Shown: piece by piece, positions 9,010 through 40,798 of the stretch
Layout of the letters: every line of letters starts with the position of its first letter
Numbering within the stretch: the stretch's first letter is position 1
Virus record (IMG/VR): IMGVR_UViG_3300034073_005389
Span: 1-64,000 of that record
DNA: 64,000 bases
Strand: one strand, 5' to 3'
Notes under the pieces: generated by a model
The model's database searches: none
Seen by the model: only the letters and a program-made list of their open reading frames with translations
Told to the model about the DNA's origin: nothing
Position numbers and translations under genes: made by a program

Positions 9010-9593
9010 TTAGATAAAACTTTTTTAAAGTATTCTGTTTGTTTTTCAAATACTTCTTTGGTAGCTTTTACGTCAGCTTCGGCGGTATGTGCTTTTTCGT
9101 TTTTAACGCCATACTTTTTTACTAAGTTAGCTAAACTATAGCCTTCTGCTAGGGTACCTTTACACCAATCTAAAAAGAATTCAATTTGCATGGTGTCTAG
9201 GGTTCTTCTGCCAAAAGGAAAAGTATCTTTTGAATTGCACTTTATCCAAAGTTGCTCTAGCATTAATTTATCAAAGGCTATATTCTGACCACACAGAATC
9301 TTTTTTTCTGCAGGAACTCCGTCTTCTGCGACCCAATTTTCAATTTCAATAATTATTTTGTTAGGATCTTTGTATGTATCTGTGCCAAATTTAGTTTGGT
9401 GTTTTAAATCTTCTAATTTATGACCGTTAACTCGTAAAGCCCCAGAATCAATGGTCTCATAATTAATTGGTCTCAAATGCCAAGTGCGCTGGACATGATC
9501 TGTTAATCTGTACATTGATAATTCAATGACATCATGTCTGTAAGCATCTAGCCCAGTAGTTTCTACGTCAGCAATATAAATTACATAATCCAT
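9006..9593 (-). CDS. DEDDh 3'-5' exonuclease (DnaQ-like)
   Basis: DVETTG (Exo I), GQNIAFD (Exo II), HTAEAD (Exo III). Confidence 0.92.
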   Translation of the reverse strand: MDYVIYIADVETTGLDAYRHDVIELSMYRLTDHVQRTWHLRPINYETIDSGALRVNGHKLEDLKHQTKFGTDTYKDPNKIIIEIENWVAEDGVPAEKKILCGQNIAFDKLMLEQLWIKCNSKDTFPFGRRTLDTMQIEFFLDWCKGTLAEGYSLANLVKKYGVKNEKAHTAEADVKATKEVFEKQTEYFKKVLSK

Positions 9594-9621
9594 AAAATTA
9601 CACCTCTTGTAACGATGAGGT

Positions 9622-9649
9622 ATCTTAATTTTTATTAATTACATGTCAA
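9622..9649 (-). promoter_or_regulatory. Sigma-70-type promoter upstream of the exonuclease gene
   Basis: Minus strand TTGACA (9649-9644)-N16-TAAGAT (9627-9622). Confidence 0.7.
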
Positions 9650-10011
9650 GCTTGGTTTGATAAAACTTTTTTTAATTCATTTTTTAATACATTTAAAGAT
9701 TTGATACCTTGTTTATGCTGATTTATTAAAAAATTAAATCCATTAACTGTACGAAGATATTCTTTTTCTTTATTGTTTAATTTAGAACCTTCTAAGACAA
9801 ACATAACTTTATTGTCTTCAAAAATTTTCCATCTTTCCCCGTTATTAGGGATAGATATTCTTTTAACTCTAATTACTTTTTCTACAGTATTATTTTCTTC
9901 TCTGTGAAAATCATATTCAAATTTATTTAATGTATATTTAGTGTTCTTTTCTTTCATTTCGTCAGTAATCGACATAACGCGGTATGAATCATCATCTACA
10001 TTATTTTTCAT
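9646..10011 (-). CDS. Hypothetical protein
   Basis: 121 aa ORF in the operon; no motif recognised. Confidence 0.65.
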   Translation of the reverse strand: MKNNVDDDSYRVMSITDEMKEKNTKYTLNKFEYDFHREENNTVEKVIRVKRISIPNNGERWKIFEDNKVMFVLEGSKLNNKEKEYLRTVNGFNFLINQHKQGIKSLNVLKNELKKVLSNQA

Positions 10012-10018
10012 TTTTCCC

Positions 10019-11230
10019 TCATTTACAAATAGAATCTACACAAATCGTGCCCATAGCAGCAGCACTTAATATGCCGTGTATTCCAGCAGACTCTCCTGCC
10101 ACAAACATGCCACTTACTTCTGTTTCTAAATTTGAACCAATATTAATTTTAGGAGCCATGGGAAGAATGGTCGGAACATGAAAATATCCTTTTTGTATTA
10201 CTTCTGGTATAATAATAGATAAATTTTCTATCATAGGTCTTAGCCAATCATATTCTGGAATAATAGATATTCTACTTTTTTTATTTATTATATTAGATAT
10301 TTTTTCTTTCACAATTCTATCATTAGCCAAAATAAAAGTTAATTTTGCAATTCTTTCAATTTGCTCAAACGCTTTTTCTTGATAAGGAATACTGCCTAAC
10401 AGAGAAAAAGAAACCTTATCTGTTTTCCACCTATTTTCATTAGATCGAAAAGATGAAATAGCAAAATCTACATGATCTTCTGGAATAACCGTACCAGACC
10501 AAGAAAGTGGTCCTAATTCTAAACTATCATCTTTATAAATACTACAATTAGATTTATTAAATTCTTTCATGGACTCAGCATTTACTTCTATCCTGATTCC
10601 ATACTTAGCAAAATTATTATTTTCTATAATTCCAAAATTCTGATAAACTTCTTTTACCCATCGCCAACCACTACGACCTACACAAACAATTAATTTTTTA
10701 CATTTAAATTCTTGATTATCAGAAGCAATAATGAAATGACCCCTTTGTTTATATATTTTTTTTATTTCATTATCAAAACTAAAAGTAATATTGTTATTTT
10801 TTTCAATGGCATCAGCCATATATTTAGATAAAGCATGAATGTCTTTAGGATAAAGCTGTAAATAATCATTTAGCTCAATCTCATATCCATGTTTTTTAAA
10901 TTTTTTTTCTAAAGAAATTTGAGGAGCTTTATCTTTAATAATTTTAAAATCATCAATATTTTTAAGAACATTGTTAACATAAGTAAATCCAGATTTTGCT
11001 TTTCGCAAACCTGTTAAATTAGATACTTTATTAATATCTGTTAAATATAATTTTCCATCACTATTAGGAAGACACCCCAACCAACCTTCTAATTGGCGAC
11101 GACGCTTCATAGGTGGTCTGCCTAAATCAAAAACAACTGTTTTTACATTTTTATATTCTTTCGCTATTTTATATGTAGCAAAAGAACCTGCTACGCCAGC
11201 ACCAATAATTCCGACATCAAAAATAGTCAT
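10019..11230 (-). CDS. FAD/NAD(P)-dependent oxidoreductase
   Basis: DVGIIGAGVAG Rossmann motif, VCVGRSG, C-terminal GMFVAGESAG..GI..AA..G. Confidence 0.85.
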   Translation of the reverse strand: MTIFDVGIIGAGVAGSFATYKIAKEYKNVKTVVFDLGRPPMKRRRQLEGWLGCLPNSDGKLYLTDINKVSNLTGLRKAKSGFTYVNNVLKNIDDFKIIKDKAPQISLEKKFKKHGYEIELNDYLQLYPKDIHALSKYMADAIEKNNNITFSFDNEIKKIYKQRGHFIIASDNQEFKCKKLIVCVGRSGWRWVKEVYQNFGIIENNNFAKYGIRIEVNAESMKEFNKSNCSIYKDDSLELGPLSWSGTVIPEDHVDFAISSFRSNENRWKTDKVSFSLLGSIPYQEKAFEQIERIAKLTFILANDRIVKEKISNIINKKSRISIIPEYDWLRPMIENLSIIIPEVIQKGYFHVPTILPMAPKINIGSNLETEVSGMFVAGESAGIHGILSAAAMGTICVDSICK

Positions 11231-11285
11231 TTATTATCCTTCACAGTTAACTGCGAGGATACTTATATCATCTTTTATTTGTTTT

Positions 11286-11939: not shown

Positions 11940-11951
11940 ATAAACCTCCTA

Positions 11952-13994: not shown

Positions 13995-14105
13995 AGTTTC
14001 TCCTAGACAGATGCAGATTTATTACAATAAACTAAAATTTATCTTATATTTACAATTAATTGTGGTATTTGGTTGTTGTCGCGTGCGCGTCCTAGGATTT
14101 GATCC

Positions 14106-15002: not shown

Positions 15003-15056
15003 ATTCTGCTCCTCAACCAATGTAGAGATATTAATATCTACCTAAATATTATAATT

Positions 15057-17583: not shown

Positions 17584-19767
17584 TCATAACCTCGAAAGTT
17601 CTCGCCACTCTACTGTAGCTATCGCTCTACGATCATTAACGCTTCCTGTATTATCTACTGTAATTACTAGTTCATCACCACCAGAAGTACTAAAACTTAC
17701 AGTCCATCCTGTTCCATTATCTGTGCTTAATGTATTATTAGTATTATCTAAAGTTAATAATCCAGCCTCTTGATAAGCTAATATATCATATACATATCTG
17801 GCACGTTCAAGAGTACCATTAGTCTCTAGTATTAATATTCTTACACATATATCATATGATTTATTATTCTCTAAAGCAATATTATTTACAGTACCAGGTA
17901 TAGTTAAATCAAAACTTGATCCAGAACCACCAGATCCATTAACAATCACTCTAGAATATTGCGAATCTCCTGCACTACCACCAAATGCATCTACCGCATG
18001 TACAAATTGTCCCGTGTATACAGTTTTACCTAAATCACCAGTAATAAATGAATAGTCTGCTCCGCTATTACTATTTTTAGCAAAAATAGCAGAATATCCA
18101 TCAGTAACAGTATTACTACCGCCAAATATGTAATTATTAACAGCAGAAGTAGATAATGTATTATTATCTCCTAATATATAATTTGCATTACAGCTATTTC
18201 CTATTGTATTGCTTGCGCCAAATATAGTATTACCAAAGCTAGTTCCTATATTGTTAGAATCTCCTTTAACAAAAGAACCATCTGAGTTAGAAGATAATGT
18301 ATTACTGCTTCCAAATATTTGATTGTTGTCAGAACTTATATCGTTACTATCTCCAAAAATAGTAACAGATGGAGAATAACTTTGAACTGTATTGCTACTT
18401 CCAAAAATAGTAGCATATTCAGACGAACCATTGACATTATTGTCTGACCCTTTAATAGTTACATATTGAGAATTAGTAACTGTATTATTGTCTCCATTAA
18501 TTATTGTTGAATAATCAGCATTAACATCTAATGTATTGCTGCTCCCGCAAATAATAGAGCTTAAGATACTATTAATTGTATTATTATTCCCTGTCCCAAT
18601 AATAGATGCTGTCGCATTAATTTGATTGGTCGATCCATTTAACACAACGGAGTTTTGTGAGCTAATATTGTTAGTATCTCCTCCAATCACTACAGAATAA
18701 TCATTAGATACAACATTATCTGTCCCGTTTAATATAGTAGCATAATTTCCAGTAGAAATACTGTTATTATCTCCAGATAGAATAGCGGAGTATGTTGCTC
18801 CACCTAATCCATCTCCAATAGAATTATCTATTCCCCCTAAAATAGAAGAATGATCGGCGCCATTAATTGTATTAGATTCTCCACCGCCAATAAATGAATG
18901 ACCGTCATCAGTATATGTAGGAGAAGCTGGTAAAATTTGATTATCAAACCCACCTGAAATGCTAGAAAATTTAATATTAACTTGACAAGCTCTTCCTCCT
19001 AATATGGCTGAATAACTATCTTGAACAGAAGATAGCGCAGCCATATTAGTAATTCCTATTTTAGTATTATCAACACTAGAAGGATATCCTGGTCTATTTG
19101 CTTTTATATTGGCTTCGCCAGCTACTGTATCAAATACTACTGCACTAGTTCTAGGTTCCCAATTACTACCAGCTGAATCCCAAGTTAATACTTGAGCATC
19201 TGAAGGCGCTGTTGCTGATACTGCATTGCCCTGTAATCCAATTACTGTTTGAGAAGTTAATGTGCCAGATAAATCTCCACCTGCTGAAAAACTTACAGAT
19301 GGCAACCACTGTGACCCATCCCAAGTTAATACTTCATTTGCATTTGGAGCATTATTAGAAACTGGATTATTCTGCAATCCAATTACTGTTTGACTGGAAG
19401 AATCTCCAAATAAGTCGCCGCTACCAACCCAAGGAGCAGTTTCGACTAAACTCCATGCACCACTACGACGAGCATACAGACCCTCATCAACATATCCATC
19501 TCTACGCAAATAAAGAGAGCCATCCACACGATTTTCAGTGGGATAGCCATCCCCAGTGCTAATAGAAACGCCACTGTTACCAATGAAGAAAGGATCTTCT
19601 ACATTGGGAGCAGGGGCATTTGGATTATTGATACGAGCTTCTAAGATATCTAGTCTGGTACGAACAGTGGAATAGACACCATTTGGGTCAACACCAAGTT
19701 CATTTTCTATATCTTGAATATCATTTTTTATTTGTGTAATAACTGCTGGGTCTACAATAATAGGCAT
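17584..19767 (-). CDS. Fibre/adhesin-like virion protein with a long beta-solenoid repeat region
   Basis: Two copies of GDL.G....QTVIGLQ.N.VS..AP....VLTWD, then about 20 degenerate [ST].I.G..N.[IV] repeats resembling trimeric adhesin head repeats. Confidence 0.7.
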   Translation of the reverse strand: MPIIVDPAVITQIKNDIQDIENELGVDPNGVYSTVRTRLDILEARINNPNAPAPNVEDPFFIGNSGVSISTGDGYPTENRVDGSLYLRRDGYVDEGLYARRSGAWSLVETAPWVGSGDLFGDSSSQTVIGLQNNPVSNNAPNANEVLTWDGSQWLPSVSFSAGGDLSGTLTSQTVIGLQGNAVSATAPSDAQVLTWDSAGSNWEPRTSAVVFDTVAGEANIKANRPGYPSSVDNTKIGITNMAALSSVQDSYSAILGGRACQVNIKFSSISGGFDNQILPASPTYTDDGHSFIGGGESNTINGADHSSILGGIDNSIGDGLGGATYSAILSGDNNSISTGNYATILNGTDNVVSNDYSVVIGGDTNNISSQNSVVLNGSTNQINATASIIGTGNNNTINSILSSIICGSSNTLDVNADYSTIINGDNNTVTNSQYVTIKGSDNNVNGSSEYATIFGSSNTVQSYSPSVTIFGDSNDISSDNNQIFGSSNTLSSNSDGSFVKGDSNNIGTSFGNTIFGASNTIGNSCNANYILGDNNTLSTSAVNNYIFGGSNTVTDGYSAIFAKNSNSGADYSFITGDLGKTVYTGQFVHAVDAFGGSAGDSQYSRVIVNGSGGSGSSFDLTIPGTVNNIALENNKSYDICVRILILETNGTLERARYVYDILAYQEAGLLTLDNTNNTLSTDNGTGWTVSFSTSGGDELVITVDNTGSVNDRRAIATVEWRELSRL

Positions 19768-19832
19768 GTAAAATCCTTATATAAGATTTGTATGTCTCTT
19801 ATATGTTAGAATTTTAGTATTTAAAATTAAGT

Positions 19833-23157: not shown

Positions 23158-23183
23158 AATCAGCCCCAGTAAAGGGGCTGATT
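23158..23183. terminator. Stem-loop, probable terminator
   Basis: aatcagcccc-agtaaa-ggggctgatt perfect 10-bp inverted repeat in the intergenic gap; weak U-tract on the minus strand. Confidence 0.6.
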
Positions 23184-23189
23184 TTAATT

Positions 23190-23447
23190 TTATTGTTTAA
23201 CAGCTCCGCCACGCAAAATCTCACCTTGCTCTGAAATAGCATCTTGCTCTGTTAATCCATATTTCATATACAACTGCAAGATAACATACTTATAAGCTAA
23301 GTCTGCAGTCTCATTTTGAGCAATTGCTTTTTCTGCATTGGCTAGTGCAGTTTTACGATTGGCTTTAGCTAGCTCTAAAGCTAATCGATCTGTTTCTTGT
23401 AATTTTTCTTTTGGTGCTGCCATTTCTGGCATTTTAACTTCAGTCAT
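23190..23447 (-). CDS. Hypothetical coiled-coil protein
   Basis: ATG at 23447 (MTEVK) follows an AAAGGAG SD; Ala/Lys/Glu-rich helical sequence. Confidence 0.7.
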   Translation of the reverse strand: MTEVKMPEMAAPKEKLQETDRLALELAKANRKTALANAEKAIAQNETADLAYKYVILQLYMKYGLTEQDAISEQGEILRGGAVKQ

Positions 23448-23485
23448 ACTCTGCTCCTTTCTTAGCAAAGTACTTATATCAACCT

Positions 23486-24796
23486 CTATAAGATATTAGA
23501 AGCTAAAGTTGCTAACCTGCTTCTTTCACCTTTAGTAAAGGTAATATGCCCTGCTAATTCTGAATCTTTAAACTTTTCTATTGTATAAGAAAGTCCATTG
23601 TTAATGGCATCTAATTTATTATTATCAATCTGTTCGATGTCGCCTGTCAAGATAACTTTAGTTCCTTCACCGGCTCTTGTCAAGAGTGTTTTAATTTCAT
23701 CTTTAGATAAATTTTGAGCCTCATCAATTAAAATAATTGCATTGGGTATGCTTCTGCCACGTACATAAGCAATGGCATCCATTTCAATTTGACCTTTCTT
23801 TTGAAACATTTCTAAGTTTCTTTTCCAATCACCACTTTTGGTAGAAAATAATACTTCAAAACTATCCATAATTGCTTGAAACCATGGAGCTAATTTTTCT
23901 GATATATCTCCAGGCAAATAGCCAATGCCTGACCCCACCTCTTGAATTGGGCGGTAAATGATTAATTTATCATACTCTTTTTTATTTAGAACCAACTCAA
24001 TGGCAGAAGCTAGGGCTATTAAGCTCTTACCGGACCCGGCCTTTCCAATCAAAGTAACTAAATCTATATTTTTATCCATTAATAAATCAATGGCAAAAGT
24101 CTGCTCTTTGTTTCTAGGAGAAATGCTCCAAGGATAATGTTTTTTAATTGGCTTGATTTTATCAAATGACACTTTGCGACCCATGGCAATTCCATCGCCA
24201 TTTTCATTTTTAAATAAAACACATTCATTGGCTTGTAATTTTAAATTATATGCACGAGGATCAATACTATTGCTTTTCTGCAAATCTAATCCTGCAGCCT
24301 CATCAACTACTACTTGAAATCCTGTATATAATTCACTAAAAGAAGATGCTGCCCCTTCATGAGAAATAGCATCCAATCCACGAGCTTTGGCTTTAACTCG
24401 CAAATTAATATCATTGCTGACAAAGATTACATCTTTGGTAGGATGATTTTTTAAATTAGAAACTGCGCAAGCTAGAATTTGAGTATCTCCATAAGTTGGA
24501 TCTCCAAATCCAGCGAAATCTGGTAAATTTAAATCGTAATAAGTTGGGTCTACCTTTACTAAAACATCTTGCTCTTTAAGAAGTACTCCAGTACTAATAT
24601 CAGTTAACTCACTTAACTCATCTAATAATCTAATAGCTAATCTAGCTTTTTTAGCCGCATCACTAAAATCTTTTTTTAACTTATCTAATTCATTTAAAAC
24701 CGTAATTGGGATGACTACATCGCTATGATAAAATTGTTTGTAGGCACTTGGATCTTCCACTAAAACTGAAGTATCTAATATATATGTAGTTCTCAT
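23486..24796 (-). CDS. phoH: PIN-domain PhoH-family ATPase (PhoH2 architecture)
   Basis: N-terminal PIN (ILDTSVL, ELDKLK, D..IL, SNDINLRVKA); GKAGSGKS Walker A, RGRS, IIDEAQN, TGD..QID. Confidence 0.93.
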   Translation of the reverse strand: MRTTYILDTSVLVEDPSAYKQFYHSDVVIPITVLNELDKLKKDFSDAAKKARLAIRLLDELSELTDISTGVLLKEQDVLVKVDPTYYDLNLPDFAGFGDPTYGDTQILACAVSNLKNHPTKDVIFVSNDINLRVKAKARGLDAISHEGAASSFSELYTGFQVVVDEAAGLDLQKSNSIDPRAYNLKLQANECVLFKNENGDGIAMGRKVSFDKIKPIKKHYPWSISPRNKEQTFAIDLLMDKNIDLVTLIGKAGSGKSLIALASAIELVLNKKEYDKLIIYRPIQEVGSGIGYLPGDISEKLAPWFQAIMDSFEVLFSTKSGDWKRNLEMFQKKGQIEMDAIAYVRGRSIPNAIILIDEAQNLSKDEIKTLLTRAGEGTKVILTGDIEQIDNNKLDAINNGLSYTIEKFKDSELAGHITFTKGERSRLATLASNIL

Positions 24797-25203: not shown

Positions 25204-25232
25204 AAAAAGGCGGGAAAACCTCCCGCCTTTTT
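25204..25232. terminator. Bidirectional intrinsic terminator after nrdA
   Basis: aaaaaggcggga-aaacc-tcccgccttttt. Confidence 0.85.
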
Positions 25233-27956: not shown

Positions 27957-28586
27957 TTAAATCTTAATATTTTCTTTCATAGTAGAAAGGGCATTGTTAA
28001 TTATTTTAATACAATTTAATCTAGAAATATTTAATTTTTTACAAATTTTATTAATAGAGATGGGCTTATCTCCATCTAGACCATAAGCTAGGGAAATAAT
28101 TTCTTTTTGTTGATTTGACAAAGTGCTAATTGCATTTTGTATAGCAAAATTGGTTTGACAATTTTCTAGTTGTTTATCTGGGCAGTATTGATCTTCTACG
28201 ATAACGGGCATAATAGCTTCTTTATGAGGTGCTGTTTCTTTAGCCACTCGTAAAGGGTAACGAATAGTAGTGTGAAGGTTGGCGCTTCTAGAAATACGAG
28301 TCCCAATATAATGATGTGCCCAAGCAAAAAAAGATCCTTTCTTAGGGTTATATGTTTTAATTGCCTTAATTAAGGCTTCAAAACCTTCTTGATTTAAATC
28401 TTCATAATTACTAAAAGTTTTATATCTGCCAGTTTTCATAGTAACTAAATATTTAAGTTTATTAATGCATTTTTGTTCATGCATTTTTAATTCAGAACGA
28501 ATTTTAGAATCATTGGTAGACTGAACTGCAGAACGTAAATCTACTAACTTAATTATTAAATCTTGCGCTTCTTGTTCGGTTAGCAT
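27957..28586 (-). CDS. Phage RNA polymerase sigma-70-family factor
   Basis: Region 2 YEDLNQEG..ALIKAIKTYNPKKGSFFAWA; region 4 LS.QQKEII.L.YGL......I.KKLNISR. Confidence 0.88.
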   Translation of the reverse strand: MLTEQEAQDLIIKLVDLRSAVQSTNDSKIRSELKMHEQKCINKLKYLVTMKTGRYKTFSNYEDLNQEGFEALIKAIKTYNPKKGSFFAWAHHYIGTRISRSANLHTTIRYPLRVAKETAPHKEAIMPVIVEDQYCPDKQLENCQTNFAIQNAISTLSNQQKEIISLAYGLDGDKPISINKICKKLNISRLNCIKIINNALSTMKENIKI

Positions 28587-28825: not shown

Positions 28826-29026
28826 TCATTTATAATTATCTTTTGCCCAACCACCACCCATTAGCATAAAATTGGTACCAGAGGCGATCAATCTTTTTAC
28901 TTTTTGAGGTGGTAAATTTTGTTTGGCGCAAACAGATCTGGGACACTCTTCTAATTTATCATTAATAGAGTGTTCGTATTCAAATTCTTTGTTGCAAGTT
29001 TCGCATTTATATAAATATGTTGGCAT
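28826..29026 (-). CDS. FmdB-family zinc-ribbon protein 1
   Basis: MPTYLYKCETC.KEFE..HSI.D.LEECP...C...RLIASG.NF.L.GGGWAKDNY; ATG at 29026 with AAGGA SD. Confidence 0.85.
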   Translation of the reverse strand: MPTYLYKCETCNKEFEYEHSINDKLEECPRSVCAKQNLPPQKVKRLIASGTNFMLMGGGWAKDNYK

Positions 29027-29037: not shown

Positions 29038-29065
29038 AATGTAAAATATGTATAATAATTGTCAA
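29038..29065 (-). promoter_or_regulatory. Sigma-70-type promoter upstream of FmdB protein 1
   Basis: Minus strand TTGACA (29065-29060)-N16-TACATT (29043-29038). Confidence 0.6.
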
Positions 29066-32069: not shown

Positions 32070-32656
32070 TATAAAATCCTTGTTAAAATATTTTTATCTA
32101 AACCAGCTAATTCTGCCTCTTGTAAGGCTCCTACTATGGAAAAATCATCCATCTTAGATAAGAAGGCTAAATCTCCATAAGTTTGCAGGCTAAATCCTTT
32201 GTCATTGAAAATATTTTTATATTTATCTGGTAAAGGAGTTTCTCGGCTAATAGTCTGAGAAGTGGAAAATAAATATTTTAGTTTATATTCATTGACGACT
32301 CCTTCTACTGTCATAAAAGAAATAGAAGTTAATCTTCTTTTAGCTTTTACTACTTTATTTAAGTAAACCCAATCAATATATTCTTTTAAGATAGAAGGAT
32401 TGGAGGATAGTAGTTGTGACAATTTTTTAATTTGAAATACTTCAAAACATTTTGAAGGAGCTGAATTATTAAATTTAAATTTATAATCTATTTGATATGT
32501 TTCTTTGTACTTTTTACAAAAGTAAGCCAAAACATGCAATACCTTCCAGTCTTTTACTTCTAAGGTATCTATTTCTGAAAATTTTAGAAAAAACTTTTTA
32601 TAGTTTTCATTGGGGGCTTCTCCTAAATTTCCGCCAGTCAAATCAATTTTCTTCAT
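32069..32656 (-). CDS. Hypothetical protein in the replication operon (possible initiator/loader partner)
   Basis: 195 aa; TAATG coupling to the next gene; function inferred from position only. Confidence 0.6.
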   Translation of the reverse strand: MKKIDLTGGNLGEAPNENYKKFFLKFSEIDTLEVKDWKVLHVLAYFCKKYKETYQIDYKFKFNNSAPSKCFEVFQIKKLSQLLSSNPSILKEYIDWVYLNKVVKAKRRLTSISFMTVEGVVNEYKLKYLFSTSQTISRETPLPDKYKNIFNDKGFSLQTYGDLAFLSKMDDFSIVGALQEAELAGLDKNILTRIL

Positions 32657-34163
32657 TGCTTGTACCTAATAAATCCTTTTTTAAATCTTTGGGTATTATT
32701 ATTTTAAATCCTGTTTCAGTAGAATATATTTTATGTCGCTTTTTAGAATGCGCCTTTAAATATTTTACATCATCAAAAAAATCTACAATAGCAGCATATT
32801 TTTTACCAGGGAACTTACGAATTACTCTACCTATTCTCTGCAATGCTCGAATACTGCTTTTGCCACCTCCAGTTAATACCAAGGCAGACAAAGAGCTAAT
32901 ATCAACTCCGATATCAAAAATAGAGCTGGCTAATACTAAATTAGATTTTTTAGATAATAAATTTTGCTTGGTCTGATTTCTTTTTTCTAAAGAATCAGAG
33001 CCTGATAAATATTCGTAAGGAATTTCCTGTTCCTCAAATAATTCACATAAATTTTTGCCATGCTGCAAATGCTTGAACAATACTAATACTTGATAATTCT
33101 TTGTCAAGAGATCCTTCACTTGATCAATTATCAAATTATTTCTGATTATATTTTCAGAAATATATTCTTTATACACAGTTTGATAGTTAGCTGTACCTGT
33201 TCCAATATAGGTTTTAGGAACTCTAACAAATTTAATAATAGGTTGCGCCAAATGCCCCTCTTCTATTAATTCAGAAGCCTGCACATTGACAATTTGCTCT
33301 CCTAATATTCCATTGATAAGTAAATCTGATCCATCATCTCTAAATGGAGTGCCTGAGAAACCATAAATATATTCAGGATCTATTTTAGTAAAAATATTTT
33401 TAATAGTATCAGTAGTAACTACGTGACTTTCATCAAAAATATGAACTTTAGCTTGTTGAAGCATAGAAACAATTTGCTCGCTTTGAGTTTGAGTAGGAGC
33501 AGTTTCTTTTTCTTCTAATTCATCATCTGTAACGATAGAATGTTTTAATTTTAACGCGCTGCTAACAGACCAAATACTAACGATATTAATCCGATGGATA
33601 CGACAAACACCATTTCCGATAAATCCGATTGGTTCGTCAAATAATAAGGAAAAAAGATCATAAAATTGTTGCAATAAGTCTATACCAATTACATAAATAT
33701 TGGTAGGTTTATTAAGCTTCGCAGTAATCAAAGCTGTGCAAAGAGTTTTACCTGCACCAGTGCAAGCACGCACAATTCCTTTGTGATTGTTAACAGCTGC
33801 ATCTACAATCTTTTGCTGATAAGATCTGGTAGTGAAATTATTTTGAACTAATTTATCTGATAAATCAATTGAATCATTTTTCTTAACTGATTCTCTTTTA
33901 TCAATTAATTCAAAATTAATTTTATTTGTATTTAAAAAATGTATTACTTTATTTAATAGTCCTAATAAAAAAGTACCATTTTTGGCTAATAAGTAATTTA
34001 CTCCATCCCAACCATTTTTGTATGCTGCCGTATATTCTACACCTGCAGTTTTATATGACAAGGTGCGTCTTAATCTATTAAATAATAATGGGTTACTTAA
34101 TTTTATTTGACCATGTTTATGATTATGAATAATTATTTGACAAATTTCTTGTGATTCTGACAT
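32643..34163 (-). CDS. UvsW/Rad25-like superfamily 2 helicase
   Basis: RSYQ (Q motif), ACTGAGKT, FDESH, GFSGTPFRDDG, IFDIGVDI, QRIGRVIR. Confidence 0.9.
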   Translation of the reverse strand: MSESQEICQIIIHNHKHGQIKLSNPLLFNRLRRTLSYKTAGVEYTAAYKNGWDGVNYLLAKNGTFLLGLLNKVIHFLNTNKINFELIDKRESVKKNDSIDLSDKLVQNNFTTRSYQQKIVDAAVNNHKGIVRACTGAGKTLCTALITAKLNKPTNIYVIGIDLLQQFYDLFSLLFDEPIGFIGNGVCRIHRINIVSIWSVSSALKLKHSIVTDDELEEKETAPTQTQSEQIVSMLQQAKVHIFDESHVVTTDTIKNIFTKIDPEYIYGFSGTPFRDDGSDLLINGILGEQIVNVQASELIEEGHLAQPIIKFVRVPKTYIGTGTANYQTVYKEYISENIIRNNLIIDQVKDLLTKNYQVLVLFKHLQHGKNLCELFEEQEIPYEYLSGSDSLEKRNQTKQNLLSKKSNLVLASSIFDIGVDISSLSALVLTGGGKSSIRALQRIGRVIRKFPGKKYAAIVDFFDDVKYLKAHSKKRHKIYSTETGFKIIIPKDLKKDLLGTSNEEN

Positions 34164-34250
34164 AAATTCCTACTCGATCTAGAAATTTATATATCGAATA
34201 GGAATAAAAATAGTTTTTTAAAATTGATTTTATCTTATATATCAATTAAA

Positions 34251-34283
34251 TGAAAAAGCCATACGAAATTAATCGTATGGCTT
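34251..34283 (-). terminator. Intrinsic terminator downstream of the tubulin gene
   Basis: aagccatacga/tcgtatggctt 11-bp stem followed by UUUUU on the minus strand. Confidence 0.82.
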
Positions 34284-34304
34284 CTTGCTAAACAAAGGTA
34301 GATT

Positions 34305-37076
34305 TCACTTTCTGCGATCTACTAATCCAGTTACCAACTTACCAAAAGATGAAGATTTTGCTGCAATTTTGTCTTTAATCTTCTGAGCAGCTGATACTGT
34401 TTCATTTACTCCAGTATCTAAGTTCAAAGTAAGATTTCTTGAATCATCTTTGTCTTTTACTTTAGATTGAAGTTCTTTAGTTTCTGCTTTTAGCTGTTCT
34501 ACACGAGAGTTAGGCAATCCTAGTCCAGAAAACATACTATATACTTTTACAGTGTCTGCAGCAGAATCTACTACATACATACCTTTAAATACTCCTTTAG
34601 GAGTGCCACATAGATCATTAATCATGCTACTAGCATAATTAATACTGGAGGCTGGAATCTTAGACCATACTTCTTTGTTAGCCACCACCATAAAACCAAC
34701 ATACTTAGACTGCTTTAAATCAAAACCGCTGGCTAATAAGTTTCCTGATAAGTTGTTAATAACAGCTTCAGCAATAGCTGTATCTTCTTGATAATTATCA
34801 ACAGTAAATTCCCCATATACTGAGAGACCTTCCCCATCAATAAATAACTTAGAGAATTCCATAGGGTCTAGTGCCTTAGTAGAAGAAGGCATGCTAGACA
34901 AAGTATTGAAAGCATCGATAGGATCGACAATGGCTTTATTAGCTACGCCATAAAAATCTACCTGACTTACGTTGTGATAAATTGTTTCAATCTTTGCGTT
35001 ATCTACTACAATAAGATTACTAACTCGTTTGCTTTGAGTAAGCTTAGCCAATTTAGCTAATGTCTCTAATGCATTAGATTTGGTCTGAGAATCTTCTGTA
35101 TCCATAGGAAGGGCAGCAATTACTACTAATGGCTTTCCCATATCTGCAAGTAAATCTACTAATGTTTCACAGGAGCCTGCTCCAGAGCCGCCACCTAAGC
35201 TAAGGCAGAGTAAGTGAACTTGGGCTGAGCTTAAACGATCATTAACTAATTGTGCAATTTGACCACGATGAGTTTCAGCAGCTGCTTTACCAATTTCAAT
35301 TTCTTTAGCAGCACCACCTAAGCCATATTCTAGAAGCAATTTGTTGCTATCAGGAATATCAATAAATTTTAGATCTTGTAAAGCAGTGTTAACCACACAT
35401 GCCTGATATCCTAATTTGTAAAAAGACTCGGCTAAGCGACTATTATGAGTAAATATGAATCCATTTTCTCCAGCAACATAATTTTCATATGTTTCTACTG
35501 TCAAATCAAAAAATTCATATTGATCATCTTCTGTATCAATTTTAATATTTTTAATATCAATCAGTTTAGGGGCGATGTCTGAAATATAACTCAATTGATC
35601 AGATTTATTTAAATTAGAAATCATATTTATAAATGTTGGAATTGACAAGTCTCTAACTCCAGCCACCCAATTTTTGATATTTAAATTTGTCTTTTTATAA
35701 AATTCATTTGGTCCACCAAAACCTCCTTCTTTAACTAAAACGTGATCAATGTCCTTATAATCAATAGGGACAATAGATGTTGTATAGCTTTTCTGTTTTT
35801 TAGTCAAATGATTAGATAGCCTGCTATGTTTTAATGTAGACTTTACATTATCACATAAAAAATCTGCCATTGGTCCGAAATTTAATTTACCATTTATAGA
35901 TATTTTAAATCCATCTTTTTCGTTATCTCTATTAGAAATACTATTTCTTAATGAAGATCTCCCACCAATAGAAGAAATTAAACATCCTAATTTACTAGCT
36001 AATGCGCTAGAAGTAGTATATACTTGAGCCTCGCACCAATCATCGCTTACAGTTCCATCAGCATCTATTAAGCCGGATAAAAATGCAGTTCTTACTTCTA
36101 ATGAAGCAGCAGAGACACAAGAAGGTACATCAATAGAGTACGTTTTATGACCAAATCCTCCATTAGTTTTTCCTACGTACATGTTAAAACAAGATTCAAT
36201 AAACAAACGGAATGAAAGACCAAAAACCTCTACTTGATCACATCCCGCTCTTTTATTAAGAGATATTGATGAATGAGGGATTAATGAACATACCTCAACA
36301 ATGTTTTTAGTTACATTTTCATCACTTGAATAAAATGATATGGAATTTCCATGTAATTTATCGTGACCATCCCCTGCAAAAACACCTAATAACCAAGCTA
36401 TTTTGCTATTTATTTCTATACCTCTAACATAGGTTTTTTGAGAAATTATATCAACAGGCTCTAATCTAGTATCTACTAGATTATCGCCAACAGATAATGG
36501 CTTACTATTACTTAATGAAGAAAAAAATGCTTTTCTTCTTGACATAGGTTTAAAAACTAAACTTGGATGTGTTTTTGAACATGAAAGACTTGTTCCATTG
36601 CTTAATATAATTTTATTTTTAATACTTTTTTTGTTTTTCCATACAGCTAAAACTTTTCCCTTTTTAATTTGACCAGTTTCTGGATCTATAGAAACAGTAT
36701 AAACATCTTTGTCTAATTCAATGCAAATATCATTATTTGCCTGCATTTTTATATTTTCTAATTTTGAACAATTTAATTGATTATAGAAAAAATCTTTAAT
36801 TGAAATTATTCCGTAATCAGAAAGATAAATATTGGTATTACCATCTATACATCCTGCCTGACCCGAACCTAATACACCTACTTGTAAACTTCTTTCTTTA
36901 GGTGCTACGATTTTTGCTGCCATTTTTGACTCCTGTTGTTTTGCTTGACTTTTCGCTTTTAGAGCGGCTAATTTATTTGTATCTATTGTATCTTCTGATG
37001 CCTTTACTTCTGCGGTTGAAATATTATCTACAACATTTTCGGGTTTATTTTCTTCTGTAATTGAAGTTGCTGACAT
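34305..37076 (-). CDS. Tubulin/FtsZ-superfamily GTPase (CetZ/TubZ-like) precursor interrupted by an intein; about 453 aa after splicing
   Basis: After removing residues 76-545: VGVLGSGQAG|SRLAE, VVNTA.QDL, LSLGGGSGAG (tubulin signature), ALP...E, IVVDN, LDPMEF (T7-like); AAGGAG SD before the ATG. Confidence 0.92.
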   Translation of the reverse strand: MSATSITEENKPENVVDNISTAEVKASEDTIDTNKLAALKAKSQAKQQESKMAAKIVAPKERSLQVGVLGSGQAGCIDGNTNIYLSDYGIISIKDFFYNQLNCSKLENIKMQANNDICIELDKDVYTVSIDPETGQIKKGKVLAVWKNKKSIKNKIILSNGTSLSCSKTHPSLVFKPMSRRKAFFSSLSNSKPLSVGDNLVDTRLEPVDIISQKTYVRGIEINSKIAWLLGVFAGDGHDKLHGNSISFYSSDENVTKNIVEVCSLIPHSSISLNKRAGCDQVEVFGLSFRLFIESCFNMYVGKTNGGFGHKTYSIDVPSCVSAASLEVRTAFLSGLIDADGTVSDDWCEAQVYTTSSALASKLGCLISSIGGRSSLRNSISNRDNEKDGFKISINGKLNFGPMADFLCDNVKSTLKHSRLSNHLTKKQKSYTTSIVPIDYKDIDHVLVKEGGFGGPNEFYKKTNLNIKNWVAGVRDLSIPTFINMISNLNKSDQLSYISDIAPKLIDIKNIKIDTEDDQYEFFDLTVETYENYVAGENGFIFTHNSRLAESFYKLGYQACVVNTALQDLKFIDIPDSNKLLLEYGLGGAAKEIEIGKAAAETHRGQIAQLVNDRLSSAQVHLLCLSLGGGSGAGSCETLVDLLADMGKPLVVIAALPMDTEDSQTKSNALETLAKLAKLTQSKRVSNLIVVDNAKIETIYHNVSQVDFYGVANKAIVDPIDAFNTLSSMPSSTKALDPMEFSKLFIDGEGLSVYGEFTVDNYQEDTAIAEAVINNLSGNLLASGFDLKQSKYVGFMVVANKEVWSKIPASSINYASSMINDLCGTPKGVFKGMYVVDSAADTVKVYSMFSGLGLPNSRVEQLKAETKELQSKVKDKDDSRNLTLNLDTGVNETVSAAQKIKDKIAAKSSSFGKLVTGLVDRRK
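35442..36851 (-). mobile_element. Intein (470 aa) with a LAGLIDADG homing endonuclease, in the tubulin gene
   Basis: N-terminal CIDGNT (Cys1 = residue 76), block B SCSKTHP, LAGLIDADG motifs WLLGVFAGDG and FLSGLIDADG, block F FFDLTVETYENYVAG, C-terminal IFTHN followed by Ser+1. Confidence 0.95.
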
Positions 37077-37102
37077 TATATCTCCTTAATAACATTATTT
37101 AA

Positions 37103-38894: not shown

Positions 38895-39895
38895 AAACCA
38901 ACTCGAACTCCTGCCATAATTTTTACATTCGCATCAGTACCTACATGCACCGATGGTCCTAAATAAAAATTTTTCATAAATGGTAAATGTTGCCCAACAT
39001 TATAAGCAAATGGTGTCAAACTAAATTGAAATGTCTGACTTACTACCCCATATCCAACACCTACCTGTAATACAGAAAAATCTGGAGTGTTTAAATATCT
39101 ACCATAAGACATAATCCCTAGATTAATAGAGGGGGCAAATTCTCCTTGCACCGGATTTAAAGCCACACCTCCATCTAAGCCAACAAACAATCTTGGATTC
39201 CAAAAACTCCATTTAGCCTCTGGATACTGTTGCTTTGTAGTAGTTTGAACTGGGATCTCATATTCTTTATCATCTACTCTAAGAGTGACTCTGTTATACA
39301 CGTAAGTTTTCTCATTTTCATCTACCCCAATTACTGTGCCTAATTTATATTGTCTTGGCTTAATCTCTACATACCATGGATTTTCTTTCCAGGCACTAAA
39401 TCCAACCTTACCTAAAGGAACAGTAAACTTTCCAAAATTCTCTTCTAAATCACGAATTTGCTGCTGCTTTAAATATCCAAACACGTCTATGGCAGGGCAC
39501 ATACCATCTTTGCATTCAGATGGTTTATTGTTTGGGTTATAAGCAGGATTTGCTTCTCCTACCCCACTGCTAGGAAGATTGTATTCTTTTTGACCTAAAC
39601 TTTGAAAAATAACAAAATTAGCAGCTACAATATCTGCCTGTAATTTATCTAAATCATTTTTCACAGCATTGTAATTAATACCATTGTTATTAACAAAGCT
39701 TTCTAAATCTTTCTTAGTAGCATACTCTGTTTGGCTACGAAAAATGCCATCTACAAGCTCTTTTTGCTTAGTAACTTGATCTTCAATGTTCTTTTGACGC
39801 TCAGACATTTCAACTACTTTAAAAGTAATTAATGCAAGAGCTGTTAATACTATCAACACGCTAGCTATAATAATAGCTTGTAGATACTTTGGCAT
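38891..39895 (-). CDS. Membrane-anchored hypothetical protein: N-terminal TM helix, coiled coil, C-terminal amphipathic beta-strands
   Basis: Residues about 5-27 hydrophobic; heptad-like region follows; alternating Gly/aromatic strands end in MAGVRVGL. Confidence 0.7.
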   Translation of the reverse strand: MPKYLQAIIIASVLIVLTALALITFKVVEMSERQKNIEDQVTKQKELVDGIFRSQTEYATKKDLESFVNNNGINYNAVKNDLDKLQADIVAANFVIFQSLGQKEYNLPSSGVGEANPAYNPNNKPSECKDGMCPAIDVFGYLKQQQIRDLEENFGKFTVPLGKVGFSAWKENPWYVEIKPRQYKLGTVIGVDENEKTYVYNRVTLRVDDKEYEIPVQTTTKQQYPEAKWSFWNPRLFVGLDGGVALNPVQGEFAPSINLGIMSYGRYLNTPDFSVLQVGVGYGVVSQTFQFSLTPFAYNVGQHLPFMKNFYLGPSVHVGTDANVKIMAGVRVGL

Positions 39896-39901
39896 ATTTC
39901 C

Positions 39902-40747
39902 TCACTTCTGTACGTCAGGGCACCAATGAATTGTCCTGCCTTCTGGCGTAGCCTCTGTCTTTACTATGTTGCCCAACGGGTCTTGCTTGTTTCCATACAC
40001 TCTAAAGAAACTAGAATAGTTCCCTTCTTCTCCATATACATTTGTATATGTATGTAGAGTGGCTCCCTGATATTGGTATGATTCTTGCATCACGGTAACA
40101 ATATCTTGACATAAACTATTAATCTCATTGTACATCAATTTATTGCCAGGTCTCCAAGGAGAAATTTTAGATAAATATAACGCTTCAGCTCTTATATAAT
40201 TACCAACTCCTGCAAAAATAGATTGATCCATCAATAACTGACCAATTGGTTTATCACTATTTAATTTTTTATGAATACGATTCTTATAATCATTATAATT
40301 GTCTTGTAAAGGATCCCATCCTAAGCTTTTTAATTTTTTCTCTAAAGCTTGTTTGCCTTTAACAAACTTAATTGTTCCAAAATGTCTGGGATCATTAAAA
40401 TACAGCTTGCTCGTAGTTCCATCTTTATCTTCTAAGTCTATAATAAAACATGGATGCTTGCCTTCTTTTGGGCTCCATTGACCTGTCATGCCATATGTAC
40501 AAAACATATACCAATCATTGGTAAATGTCCAATACATAAACTTACCTTTTACATTAACATCTATGATAGAGATTGGATTATGTTTAAATAAGTATCTTTC
40601 TTGCAAGAATTCAAACATACCCTCTACTGTAGAAGTAACTTTGCCATATCTTCCATTTAAGGTAGGTGAGGCGTCTATTACTTTTTTATCTATGGCAAAA
40701 ACTTTAATAAATCCGGCTGATAATCTTAATTCTGGACCTTCGGGCAC
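39902..40747 (-). CDS. Fpg/Nei-family DNA glycosylase
   Basis: N-terminal (M)PEGPE, GK, YGMTG, F.DPRHFGT, H2TH LMDQSIFAGVGNYIRAEALY; GTG start with AAGGAG SD. Confidence 0.93.
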   Translation of the reverse strand: MPEGPELRLSAGFIKVFAIDKKVIDASPTLNGRYGKVTSTVEGMFEFLQERYLFKHNPISIIDVNVKGKFMYWTFTNDWYMFCTYGMTGQWSPKEGKHPCFIIDLEDKDGTTSKLYFNDPRHFGTIKFVKGKQALEKKLKSLGWDPLQDNYNDYKNRIHKKLNSDKPIGQLLMDQSIFAGVGNYIRAEALYLSKISPWRPGNKLMYNEINSLCQDIVTVMQESYQYQGATLHTYTNVYGEEGNYSSFFRVYGNKQDPLGNIVKTEATPEGRTIHWCPDVQK

Positions 40748-40770
40748 AAAAATCTCCTTATTGGGAGATC

Positions 40771-40798
40771 ATCTTAATTTTATTAAATTAGATGTCAA
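40771..40798 (-). promoter_or_regulatory. Sigma-70-type promoter upstream of the Fpg/Nei gene
   Basis: Minus strand TTGACA (40798-40793)-N16-TAAGAT (40776-40771). Confidence 0.72.

What the first reader, a model, noticed from the sequence alone, without database searches (positions are those of the whole stretch)
9593..40798. Recurrent design: promoter overlapping an anti-SD hairpin, so only the gene's own transcript should be translated
Seen at four minus-strand genes, each with a hairpin pairing the RBS region directly below a promoter-like motif. Fpg: ATCTCC/GGAGAT (40769-40752) under TTGACA-N16-TAAGAT. Exonuclease: ACCTC/GAGGT (9621-9602; the weakest) under TTGACA-N16-TAAGAT. FAD oxidoreductase: ATCCTCGCAG/CTGTGAAGGAT (11260-11236) under TGATATAAG. 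The 23447 ORF: TACTTTGCT/AGCAGAGTA (23472-23447) under TGATATAAG. A start site about 7 nt past each -10 would fall in or after the 5' arm. Established: T4 uses this logic at e, soc, 49 and I-TevI to silence read-through mRNA. Inference: a systematic way to decouple the timing of individual genes embedded in very long minus-strand operons.
Basis: partly seen in the sequence, partly recalled or inferred. Interest (0 to 1): 0.6.

Follow-up and report, generated by a model that had tools for sequence, protein, structure and literature searches.

The report
Promoter-embedded hairpins masking ribosome sites
In an uncultured 361-kb jumbo phage, a few genes have a conserved promoter sitting inside or against an RNA hairpin that hides the ribosome-binding site, as in phage T4, where only the gene's own short transcript is translated. 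The pattern is well supported for some genes, weak for others, and not genome-wide.

Summary
Two hairpins (FAD oxidoreductase, 85-aa ORF) beat every shuffle. The other two (Fpg, exonuclease) do not stand out on their own.

The promoters are real. TTGACA-N16-TAnnnT upstream of the exonuclease, and GATATAAT-type elements upstream of the oxidoreductase, are conserved across dozens of metagenomic relatives. The phage encodes its own sigma factor.

The oxidoreductase hairpin is kept in about half of 28 distinct relatives, with modest covariation.
- The UvsW-like helicase (34166-34205) has a strong hairpin in five relatives at 52-96% identity, with four unrelated arm sets and the promoter motif always in the loop or 5' arm.
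- Gene 17584-19767 has a nested hairpin.

Genome-wide tests show no general tendency, so the design is gene-specific, not systematic. No RNA data exist, so start sites are inferred from a class of SD-less genes whose ATG lies 14-17 nt from the motif.

Verdict: a new member of the known T4-type translational masking mechanism, in a new phage lineage. The start sites and the masking are inferred, not measured.

The parts
11262..11270 (-). TGATATAAG, a -10-type promoter element (class GATATAWW) of the FAD-oxidoreductase gene
   Evidence: GATATAAT lies at the same place in nearly all 80 metagenomic relatives. The motif class is enriched and strand-specific in intergenic DNA: 30 sense vs 12 antisense, 12.0+/-3.7 expected.
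11236..11260 (-). Two-tier hairpin: the outer stem ATCCT/AGGAT masks the SD; the inner stem is GCAG-TTAA-CTGT
   Evidence: -12.7 kcal/mol, z -3.95. 13 of 28 distinct sequences (the window's own plus 27 relatives) fold at p<=0.05. A covariance-model alignment has 92.5% of cells paired, against 25-50% when partners are slid, and 4 pairs with changes on both sides.
10019..11230 (-). FAD-dependent oxidoreductase gene (403 aa)
   Evidence: Pfam GIDA/Pyr_redox_2. 1146 homologues at E<=1e-20.
23473..23481 (-). TGATATAAG promoter element of the 85-aa ORF
   Evidence: TGATATA is kept in the 82%-identical relative L008.
23447..23472 (-). Hairpin covering the SD-to-AUG spacer and the A of the AUG
   Evidence: -11.5 kcal/mol, z -3.99. 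L008 has different arms but still a hairpin: -12.0 kcal/mol, z -3.3. Absent from relatives whose PhoH is 62-68% identical.
23190..23447 (-). 85-aa ORF, the last gene before a terminator at about 23158-23183
34166..34205 (-). 13-bp hairpin upstream of the UvsW-like helicase. The loop holds GATATATA (34195-34188), the 3' arm holds the SD, and the start site is predicted at about 34181-34179.
   Evidence: -15.6 kcal/mol, z -3.4. 4th highest of 479 genes for the cost of opening the initiation region. Kept in L096, L097, L099, L100, L101, L112 and L117, with four unrelated arm sets. No broken pair in the main stem, one CG-to-UA double change and six wobble-type one-sided changes.
32643..34163 (-). 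UvsW-like SF2 helicase gene (506 aa)
   Evidence: Pfam ResIII, Helicase_C, UvsW_N
34253..34286 (-). Intrinsic-terminator-like hairpin after the tubulin gene, upstream of the UvsW element
   Evidence: 14-bp stem followed by a T run. A second TGATATATAAG at 34244-34234 lies between it and the hairpin.
19769..19816 (-). Nested hairpin upstream of gene 17584-19767. The outer stem pairs with AAGGATTTT (the SD). The inner 5' arm carries CATATAAG (19805-19798).
   Evidence: -11.4 kcal/mol, z -4.8. In relative L012 the element has two changes, both in the internal loop, while the flanks are about 76-80% identical.
40771..40798 (-). Sigma-70-type promoter TTGACA-N16-TAAGAT of the Fpg gene
   Evidence: Kept as TTGACA-N16-TAGATT in L097. 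The stop codon of the upstream gene lies inside the -35 element.
40752..40769 (-). 6-bp anti-SD hairpin ATCTCC/GGAGAT followed by a T run (weak)
   Evidence: z -1.6. L097 has a different hairpin, CTCCT/AGGAG, at the same place. The site is also terminator-like.
39902..40747 (-). Fpg/Nei DNA glycosylase gene, GTG start
   Evidence: Pfam H2TH, Fapy_DNA_glyco
9622..9649 (-). Sigma-70-type promoter TTGACA-N16-TAAGAT of the exonuclease gene
   Evidence: TTGAC-N16/17-TAnnnT in all 30 distinct sequences analysed, the window's own included.
9600..9623 (-). 5-7 bp hairpin ACCTC/GAGGT (the weakest)
   Evidence: z -1.26. Lost in the closest relative L013 and kept in L053 and L042. 5 of 30 distinct sequences reach p<=0.05; the window's own (p 0.055) does not.
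9006..9593 (-). RNase T/DEDD-type exonuclease gene
   Evidence: Pfam RNase_T
27957..28586 (-). Phage-encoded sigma factor, the candidate reader of GATATAWW promoters
   Evidence: PF04542, 33.5 bits, above the cut-off. No RNA polymerase beta subunit was found in the genome.

Best explanation
The window is the first 64 kb of an uncultured jumbo myophage of about 361 kb. The phage appears to use host RNA polymerase with two promoter types: sigma-70-like TTGACA-N16-TAnnnT, and a -10-only element GATATAWW that is probably read by the phage's own sigma factor.

At a small set of genes the promoter sits inside, or directly against, the 5' arm of an RNA hairpin whose 3' arm contains the Shine-Dalgarno region. 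This is clear for the UvsW-like helicase, the FAD oxidoreductase, gene 17584-19767 and the 85-aa ORF. It is doubtful for Fpg and the exonuclease.

Transcripts that arrive from upstream contain both arms and should fold the initiation region shut. Transcripts that start at the embedded promoter begin at or after the end of the 5' arm and should leave the initiation region open. This is the T4 e/soc/49/I-TevI mechanism in a different phage lineage and with a different promoter motif.

Shown: the sequences, the predicted stabilities, conservation of the promoters, and persistence of the hairpins in relatives. Inferred: the start sites, the sigma assignment, the masking itself, and any timing consequence.
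For: 1. Promoters.
- TTGACA (25 sense, 4 antisense; 6.2+/-2.5 expected) and GATATAWW (30 sense, 12 antisense; 12.0+/-3.7 expected) are enriched and strand-specific in intergenic DNA.
- Both promoter types are conserved upstream of orthologues in up to 80 metagenomic loci.
- The phage has a sigma factor and no RNA polymerase beta subunit.

2. Start-site calibration.
- A class of SD-less genes has the ATG 14-18 nt after the G of the motif, in this genome and in relatives.
- That puts the A of the ATG at the usual +1 position, so the start site is taken as about G+15 to G+17.
- Applied to the long-leader genes, the start falls right after the anti-SD arm. At the oxidoreductase it falls at the first base of the inner stem in at least 8 of the 28 distinct sequences, the window's own included.

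3. UvsW.
- Hairpins of -15 to -30 kcal/mol (z -2.8 to -8.3) occur in relatives at 52-96% identity.
- The arm sets are four unrelated families, and the motif is always in the loop or the 5' arm.
- Within the closest group no main-stem pair is broken. There is one CG-to-UA double change and several U-A/U-G swaps, which pair only in the sense-strand RNA.

4. Oxidoreductase.
- 13 of 28 distinct sequences fold at p<=0.05, against 1.4 expected.
- 92.5% of cells are paired, against 25-50% for slid partners. Covariation score 0.131 vs 0.107+/-0.007.

5. Predicted cost of opening the initiation region falls by 5-13 kcal/mol from the long to the own transcript. UvsW ranks 2nd, the oxidoreductase 11th, the exonuclease 20th and gene 17584-19767 21st of 479 genes for this drop.

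6. Except at UvsW, no terminator lies between the upstream gene and these hairpins.
Against: - No start site is mapped. No RNA run holds the phage.
- The alignment behind the covariation count was fitted to the structure, and the covariation is modest.
- About 10 of 28 oxidoreductase relatives have long leaders without a significant hairpin, and 7 have no leader at all. The masking is therefore dispensable.
- Genome-wide there is no excess of occluded initiation regions: mean 3.54 vs 3.60 kcal/mol for shuffles.
- Promoter motifs and anti-initiation-region arms are not generally associated.
- Only 3 of 17 strict sigma-70-type promoters near gene starts carry an anti-SD arm.
- Upstream of UvsW a good terminator should limit read-through, and a second motif of the same class would produce masked transcripts. 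That does not fit a simple early/late logic.
- For Fpg and the exonuclease the own promoter is the host-type one, so the timing logic would be the reverse of T4.
Confidence: 0.6

Rival explanations
1. Some of the hairpins are chance palindromes in AT-rich intergenic DNA that happens to hold an SD and a promoter. This applies chiefly to Fpg and the exonuclease.
For: - 8-10% of shuffles fold as well.
- The Fpg site ranks 76th of 479 genes for the cost of opening the initiation region (z 0.6) and the exonuclease site 33rd (z 1.6).
- The exonuclease anti-SD is lost in the 96%-identical relative L013, and only 5 of 30 distinct sequences are significant.
- 3 of 17 sigma-70-type promoters with an anti-SD arm is close to expectation.
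- The genome-wide tests are negative.
Against: - L097 keeps an anti-SD hairpin at Fpg using different nucleotides.
- Several exonuclease relatives (L053, L042, L036, L056) have significant hairpins at the same position.
- This reading cannot explain UvsW or the oxidoreductase.
Confidence: 0.45
2. The start sites lie upstream of the 5' arms, so every transcript carries the full hairpin. The hairpin would then be a constitutive translational attenuator, a 5'-end stabiliser, or the operator of an RNA-binding repressor or activator, not a discriminator between transcripts.
For: - The start sites are only inferred.
- Upstream of UvsW, a second motif of the same class at 34244-34234 would give full-length masked leaders.
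- The inner stem GCAG-TTAA-CTGT is conserved in sequence in about 8 relatives, as a protein-binding site would be.
Against: - The 5' arm begins 1-2 nt after the -10 element, or overlaps it, which is too close for a start site upstream of the arm.
- At UvsW the motif is inside the loop.
- The SD-less genes fix the start about 7-9 nt after the hexamer.
Confidence: 0.15
3. The hairpins are RNA-processing or termination signals: RNase III sites that cut read-through RNA, or weak intrinsic terminators for the upstream gene.
For: - UvsW-type stems of 13-17 bp approach RNase III substrate size.
- The Fpg stem is followed by a T run, and the site is terminator-like.
Against: - Except at Fpg, no T run follows the stems. 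The 3' arms end 2-6 nt before the ATG.
- This would not explain why the promoter motif is always inside or against the hairpin.
Confidence: 0.08
4. The palindromes act in DNA, as operators for a dimeric repressor overlapping the promoter.
For: - The inner element contains a perfect palindrome with a GTTAAC core next to the -10.
- It is sequence-conserved in a subgroup of relatives.
- I-TevI-type autorepression at a late promoter is a precedent (PMC2988022).
Against: - The arms change completely between relatives, loop lengths vary, and U-G pairs work only in RNA of one strand.
- The outer stem always involves the SD.
Confidence: 0.07

Closest known systems
Phage T4 genes e, soc, 49 and I-TevI (also segB, I-TevII/III, and mobE of Aeh1): RBS-sequestering hairpins with an internal late promoter
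   Same: - The SD or AUG lies in the 3' strand of a helix.
- A -10-only promoter, read through a phage sigma, lies in the region that encodes the 5' strand or the loop, so own transcripts lack the 5' strand (PMC3014915, PMC2988022).
- The masking is gene-specific, not genome-wide.
- It is present in some relatives and absent in others, as reported for gene e.
   Different: - Unrelated phage lineage: an uncultured jumbo phage of about 361 kb with no close relative in the phage collection.
- The promoter motif is GATATAWW, not TATAAATA.
- The target genes differ (helicase, oxidoreductase, unknowns).
- Two candidate sites use host-type -35/-10 promoters.
- Nothing here has been measured.
5'-terminal stem-loop stabilisers of bacterial and phage mRNAs (ompA type; own knowledge)
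   Same: At the oxidoreductase, the inner stem would start at or within a base of the predicted +1 of the own transcript.
   Different: The outer stem involves the SD and would exist only in longer RNAs. A stabilising role has not been tested.
Leaderless mRNAs such as lambda cI from PRM (own knowledge)
   Same: Many genes here and in relatives have the -10-type motif 14-17 nt before an SD-less ATG, so the A of the ATG falls at +1.
   Different: This is a companion observation used to calibrate the start sites. It is not the masking mechanism, and it is predicted only.
SD-masking RNA thermometers and riboswitch expression platforms
   Same: The SD is sequestered in a hairpin.
   Different: No Rfam family matches the window. 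The stems are stable and show no ligand-pocket features. Release is explained by promoter position, not by a signal.

Membership tests
T4-type promoter-in-hairpin translational masking | The SD and/or start codon is sequestered in a stable helix in the long transcript | tested here: met
   Predicted only. Stabilities are -11 to -16 kcal/mol with z <= -3.4 for the oxidoreductase, the 85-aa ORF, UvsW and gene 17584-19767. Fpg and the exonuclease are weak (z -1.3 to -1.6). At the 85-aa ORF the SD is mostly in the loop.
T4-type promoter-in-hairpin translational masking | A promoter lies in the DNA that encodes the 5' arm or loop, so own transcripts lack the 5' strand | tested here: inconclusive
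   Motif position and conservation fit. The start site is inferred from the motif-to-ATG distance of SD-less genes. No 5' ends have been mapped.
T4-type promoter-in-hairpin translational masking | Transcription from upstream reads through the hairpin | tested here: inconclusive
   The upstream genes are co-directional and 38-65 nt away, with no terminator-like site between, at five of the six sites. At UvsW a terminator-like hairpin (34286-34253) precedes the element.
T4-type promoter-in-hairpin translational masking | The upstream and internal promoters belong to different temporal classes | not testable with these tools
   Two promoter types and a phage sigma exist, but no expression data.
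T4-type promoter-in-hairpin translational masking | The long transcript is translated poorly and the short one well | not testable with these tools
   Only the predicted opening cost is available: 9-15 kcal/mol for the long transcript against 2-6 for the own transcript.
T4-type promoter-in-hairpin translational masking | The structure is maintained by selection (covariation in relatives) | tested here: met
   UvsW has four unrelated arm sets, no broken main-stem pair, and one double change. The oxidoreductase has 4 pairs with double changes and a covariation score reached by 1 of 500 shuffles, on an alignment fitted to the structure. For the exonuclease this is not met.
Intrinsic terminator | A G+C-rich stem followed directly by a T run | tested here: not met
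   No T run follows the stems at the oxidoreductase, the 85-aa ORF, UvsW or gene 17584-19767. Only the Fpg stem has TTTT(T) after a 6-bp stem.
Curated RNA families (Rfam) | A match at the gathering score | tested here: not met
   0 matches in the 64-kb window.

The most novel reading that the evidence does not exclude
A large, globally distributed clade of huge phages (350-500 kb; soil, freshwater, subsurface) may share a regulatory grammar built on one -10-only promoter, GATATAWW, read by a phage sigma. When the promoter lies 14-17 nt before an ATG it would give leaderless mRNAs. When it lies inside a hairpin it would give the only translatable version of an otherwise masked gene. For core genes such as the UvsW helicase the hairpin has been rebuilt repeatedly with unrelated arms, so promoter position, not sequence, would encode translational competence.
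Probability: 0.35. Interest if true: 0.6.

Novelty: new member of a known kind. Interest (0 to 1): 0.45.

Why it matters
Gene regulation in uncultured huge phages is almost unknown. This analysis yields:
- a testable promoter motif
- a candidate sigma factor to read it
- a predicted class of leaderless mRNAs
- evidence that T4's way of silencing read-through mRNA has been kept, or reinvented, in a distant lineage for replication and repair genes

It helps annotate start sites and promoters in hundreds of related metagenomic genomes. It also shows that the masking is gene-specific and evolutionarily labile, not a genome-wide rule.

Tried and rejected
1. Close relatives in the phage collection: none by DNA or protein.

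2. RNA evidence:
- No RNA run holds the stretch.
- The single read-laying run (5901 bases, four DNA contig runs) showed that freshwater relatives cover sites 2 and 3, but it did not list the variants at the hairpins.

3. Genome-wide enrichment:
- The cost of opening the initiation region equals that of shuffles overall (3.54 vs 3.60 kcal/mol).
- An excess appears only for intergenic gaps of 30-100 nt, and part of it comes from terminators that abut the ATG.

4. Duplex test of the pre-start segment against the initiation region, over 38 loose motif instances: not significant.

5. L094/L095 looked like another UvsW hairpin, but the region is coding there (an N-terminal DUF723 fusion). It was discarded.

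6. RNAalifold on a MAFFT alignment of the oxidoreductase leaders gave no structure, because the arms are out of register. A covariance model was used instead.

7. Relatives at 54-68% identity for Fpg and PhoH lack the site 1 and site 4 elements altogether.

8. A first partition-function scan timed out and was replaced by a minimum-free-energy version.

9. Complex prediction, structure prediction and the atlas searches were not needed.

Full report
WHAT THE WINDOW IS

The window is the first 64 kb of a single 361,490-bp contig with 33% G+C, 11 tRNA genes and a tmRNA gene. IMG/VR holds it as a virus record rated 97% complete.

It encodes:
- a baseplate J protein
- very large structural-looking proteins
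- a TubZ/PhuZ-like tubulin interrupted by an intein
- a PIN-PhoH protein
- a UvsW-like helicase
- an Fpg glycosylase
- a DEDD exonuclease
- an FAD-dependent oxidoreductase

My simple gene calls put 421 of 480 genes on the minus strand. No close relative exists in the phage collection. Many relatives exist in metagenomes, on contigs up to about 500 kb. The source is a subsurface metagenome, and relatives occur in freshwater. The window is therefore part of an uncultured jumbo myophage.

THE OBSERVATION

All four promoter-like motifs and hairpins are at the stated coordinates.

Against dinucleotide shuffles:
- The oxidoreductase hairpin (-12.7 kcal/mol, z -3.95) and the 85-aa ORF hairpin (-11.5 kcal/mol, z -3.99) beat all 200 shuffles.
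- The Fpg hairpin (-9.4 kcal/mol, z -1.6) and the exonuclease hairpin (-8.0 kcal/mol, z -1.26) are matched by 8-10% of shuffles.

At the 85-aa ORF the SD is mostly in the loop. The stem covers the spacer and the A of the AUG.

The exact string TTGACA-N16-TAAGAT occurs only twice in the genome, at the two cited sites. TGATATAAG occurs three times.

ARE THE PROMOTERS REAL?

Generic sigma-70-like matches are not enriched in this AT-rich DNA, so other evidence is needed.

(a) Intergenic bias. In upstream intergenic DNA, TTGACA is 25 sense, 4 antisense and 6.2+/-2.5 expected. GATATA[AT][ATG] is 30 sense, 12 antisense and 12.0+/-3.7 expected.

(b) Conserved synteny and promoters. The order orf217, oxidoreductase, orf121, exonuclease is conserved in 80 metagenomic loci.
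- Upstream of the exonuclease, all 30 distinct sequences analysed have TTGAC, then 16-17 nt, then TAnnnT.
- Upstream of the oxidoreductase, nearly all relatives have GATATAAT.

(c) Individual sites.
- The Fpg promoter is kept in L097 as TTGACA-N16-TAGATT.
- The TGATATA of the 85-aa ORF is kept in L008.

(d) Transcription machinery. The phage encodes a protein with sigma-70 region 2 at 27957-28586 and no RNA polymerase beta subunit. This fits a T4-like redirection of the host polymerase. That this sigma reads GATATAWW is my inference.

WHERE WOULD TRANSCRIPTION START?

No RNA run holds this phage.

A calibration comes from a class of genes without an SD whose ATG lies 14-18 nt after the G of the motif:
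- several such genes in this genome
- 7 oxidoreductase orthologues at 15-16 nt
- several UvsW orthologues at 14-17 nt

That spacing puts the A of the ATG 7-9 nt after the hexamer, which is the usual +1 position. These are predicted leaderless mRNAs, and the start site is taken as about G+15 to G+17.

Applied to the long-leader genes, the start falls just after the anti-SD arm. For the two sigma-70-type sites, a start about 7 nt after the -10 also falls at the end of the 5' arm. These starts are inferred, not shown.

COMPARATIVE EVIDENCE, SITE BY SITE

Oxidoreductase (site 3).
- Of 28 distinct long-leader sequences (the window's own plus 27 relatives), 13 fold at p<=0.05 against shuffles, where 1.4 are expected. 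Mean z is -1.57.
- The partners of the initiation region lie at G+2 to G+18.
- With a start at G+15, the paired bases of the initiation region drop from 8-14 to 0-6. An inner stem then begins at the first base of the own transcript in at least 8 sequences.
- The inner stem varies between relatives: ACAG/CTGT, TACAG/CTGTA, ACAAAAG/CTTTTGT, CGGA/TCCG, ACCAG/CTGGT.
- A covariance model built from five relatives and searched over all loci gave an alignment with 92.5% of cells paired, against 25-50% for slid partners. Four pairs changed on both sides (4 of 500 shuffles reach this). The covariation score is 0.131 vs 0.107+/-0.007. That alignment is fitted to the structure, so the support is modest.
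- About 10 relatives have long leaders with no significant hairpin.

- The window has a 13-bp stem at 34205-34166, with GATATATA in the loop and the SD in the 3' arm (-15.6 kcal/mol, z -3.4). It ranks 4th of 479 genes for the cost of opening the initiation region.
- L096, L097 and L099 keep this stem with no broken main-stem pair, one CG-to-UA double change, and U-A/U-G swaps that pair only in sense RNA.
- L100 (76% identity), L101 and L112 (71% and 55%) and L117/L135 (52%) have 16-17 bp stems with three further, unrelated arm sets (-26 to -30 kcal/mol, z -6 to -8.3). The motif is always in the loop or the 5' arm, so a start at G+15 falls after the 5' arm.
- Other orthologues have the leaderless arrangement or no motif at all.
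- In the window, a terminator-like hairpin (34286-34253) and a second motif (34244-34234) lie upstream. This complicates a simple read-through story.

- A nested hairpin at 19816-19769 (-11.4 kcal/mol, z -4.8) carries CATATAAG in the inner 5' arm.
- In the 18-kb relative L012 the element is nearly invariant. Its two changes are both in the internal loop, while the flanks are about 76-80% identical.

85-aa ORF (site 4).
- L008 keeps TGATATA and a hairpin with different arms (-12.0 kcal/mol, z -3.3).
- Relatives whose PhoH is 62-68% identical have no intergenic element there at all.

Fpg (site 1).
- L096 is identical to the window.
- L097 has CTCCT/AGGAG in place of ATCTCC/GGAGAT.
- Relatives at 54% identity have a different gene context.

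Exonuclease (site 2).
- Only 5 of 30 distinct sequences are significant (mean z -0.6). The window's own, at p 0.055, is not one of them.
- The anti-SD is lost in the closest relative L013.

IS IT SYSTEMATIC?

No.
- Over 479 genes, the cost of freeing positions -14 to +4 equals that of shuffled upstream sequence (3.54 vs 3.60 kcal/mol).
- An excess of z>2 (11-12%) appears only for intergenic gaps of 30-100 nt, and part of it is due to terminators that abut the ATG.
- For 38 loose motif instances lying 26-62 nt before a start, complementarity between the pre-start segment and the initiation region is not enriched (4 of 38 at p<=0.05, binomial p 0.12).
- Only 3 of 17 strict sigma-70-type promoters near starts have an anti-SD arm.
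- The design looks gene-specific, and I counted no genome-wide total. Elsewhere in the genome I saw three more candidates, at 245474-245692, 315671-316033 and 173526-174176.
- By the drop in predicted opening cost from a long to a 20-nt leader, UvsW ranks 2nd, the oxidoreductase 11th, the exonuclease 20th, gene 17584-19767 21st, the 85-aa ORF 39th and Fpg 103rd of 479 genes.
- With site-specific predicted starts, the drops are 5-13 kcal/mol.

COMPARISON WITH WHAT IS KNOWN

The T4 literature describes this arrangement for e, soc, 49 and I-TevI, and also for segB, I-TevII/III and mobE of Aeh1. The SD or AUG sits in a helix on early or middle read-through RNA. A late promoter lies in the region encoding the 5' strand, so late RNAs lack that strand. 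For gene e, synthesis from structured transcripts is reduced 100-fold. Some related phages have the structure and others do not (PMC3014915; PMC2988022).

Here the geometry and the patchy phylogenetic distribution are the same. The lineage, the promoter motif and the target genes differ, and nothing has been measured. I therefore call it a new member of a known kind.

No Rfam family matches the window.

RIVALS

- Chance: plausible for Fpg and the exonuclease.
- Hairpins present in all transcripts, acting as attenuators, stabilisers or operators.
- RNase III sites or terminators. Only the Fpg stem is followed by a T run.
- DNA operators.

The arm turnover, the variable loops, the U-G pairs and the constant involvement of the SD argue for an RNA-level function that is tied to promoter position.

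LIMITS

- The gene calls are my own simple ORF selection.
- Energies are predictions at 37 C for an unknown host.
- The relatives are not phylogenetically independent.
- The shuffles behind the genome-wide scan were mononucleotide shuffles.

Noticed in passing
window 34305-37076 (-): The TubZ/PhuZ-like tubulin gene is interrupted by an intein with a LAGLIDADG homing endonuclease, giving 923 aa. Relatives L096, L097 and L100 have an uninterrupted 452-454 aa tubulin.
   Followed up: partly
L008 3889-5118 (relative of window 23486-24796): The PIN-PhoH gene of the 82%-identical relative carries an in-frame insertion of about 410 aa, intein-like, after residue 296. The window lacks it.
   Followed up: no
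window 27957-28586 (-): A phage-encoded sigma factor (Sigma70_r2), with no RNA polymerase beta subunit in the genome. It is conserved in L096-L098, with a conserved upstream block.
   Followed up: partly
genome 324-361 kb (outside the window): The motif CCATCGGTCAA occurs 40 times, all on the minus strand and mostly every 300-400 bp within 346-361 kb. There G+C rises from 33% to 55%. IMG/VR labels the record 'provirus'. This could be a host flank, another element, or an array of small genes under a third promoter type.
   Followed up: no
genome 207749-208102 and 300-343 kb (outside the window): A tmRNA gene with tag ANDNAFAPMALAA, plus 11 tRNA genes. From my own knowledge, the tag resembles alphaproteobacterial tags, which may hint at the host.
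   Followed up: no
window 62245-62253, 42614-42642, 29038-29065, and many sites genome-wide: Promoter elements lie only 6-11 nt before SD-less ATGs, for example GATATATA 9 nt before the ATG at 62235 and TTGACA-N16-TACATT 11 nt before the ATG at 29026. These predict leaderless or near-leaderless mRNAs and are conserved in relatives.
   Followed up: partly
window 9622-9649 and 40771-40798; L097 upstream of Fpg: The exonuclease and Fpg promoters share most of their spacer sequence. The Fpg promoter of L097 is nearly identical to the window's exonuclease promoter. This could be a promoter subclass with a conserved spacer, possibly a regulator site or a copied cassette.
   Followed up: no
window 40795-40797 and 9646-9648: At both sigma-70-type sites the TGA stop codon of the upstream gene lies inside the TTGACA -35 element.
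   Followed up: no
L103-L107 and proteins P0125, P0128-P0130 and others: Many UvsW-like helicase homologues carry an N-terminal DUF723 (PF05265) extension, giving 557-794 aa. The window's gene lacks it.
   Followed up: no
window 25204-25232 and 23158-23183: Good intrinsic terminators flank the unit made of the gene starting at 25164, PhoH and the 85-aa ORF. Both show compensatory changes in relative L012.
   Followed up: partly
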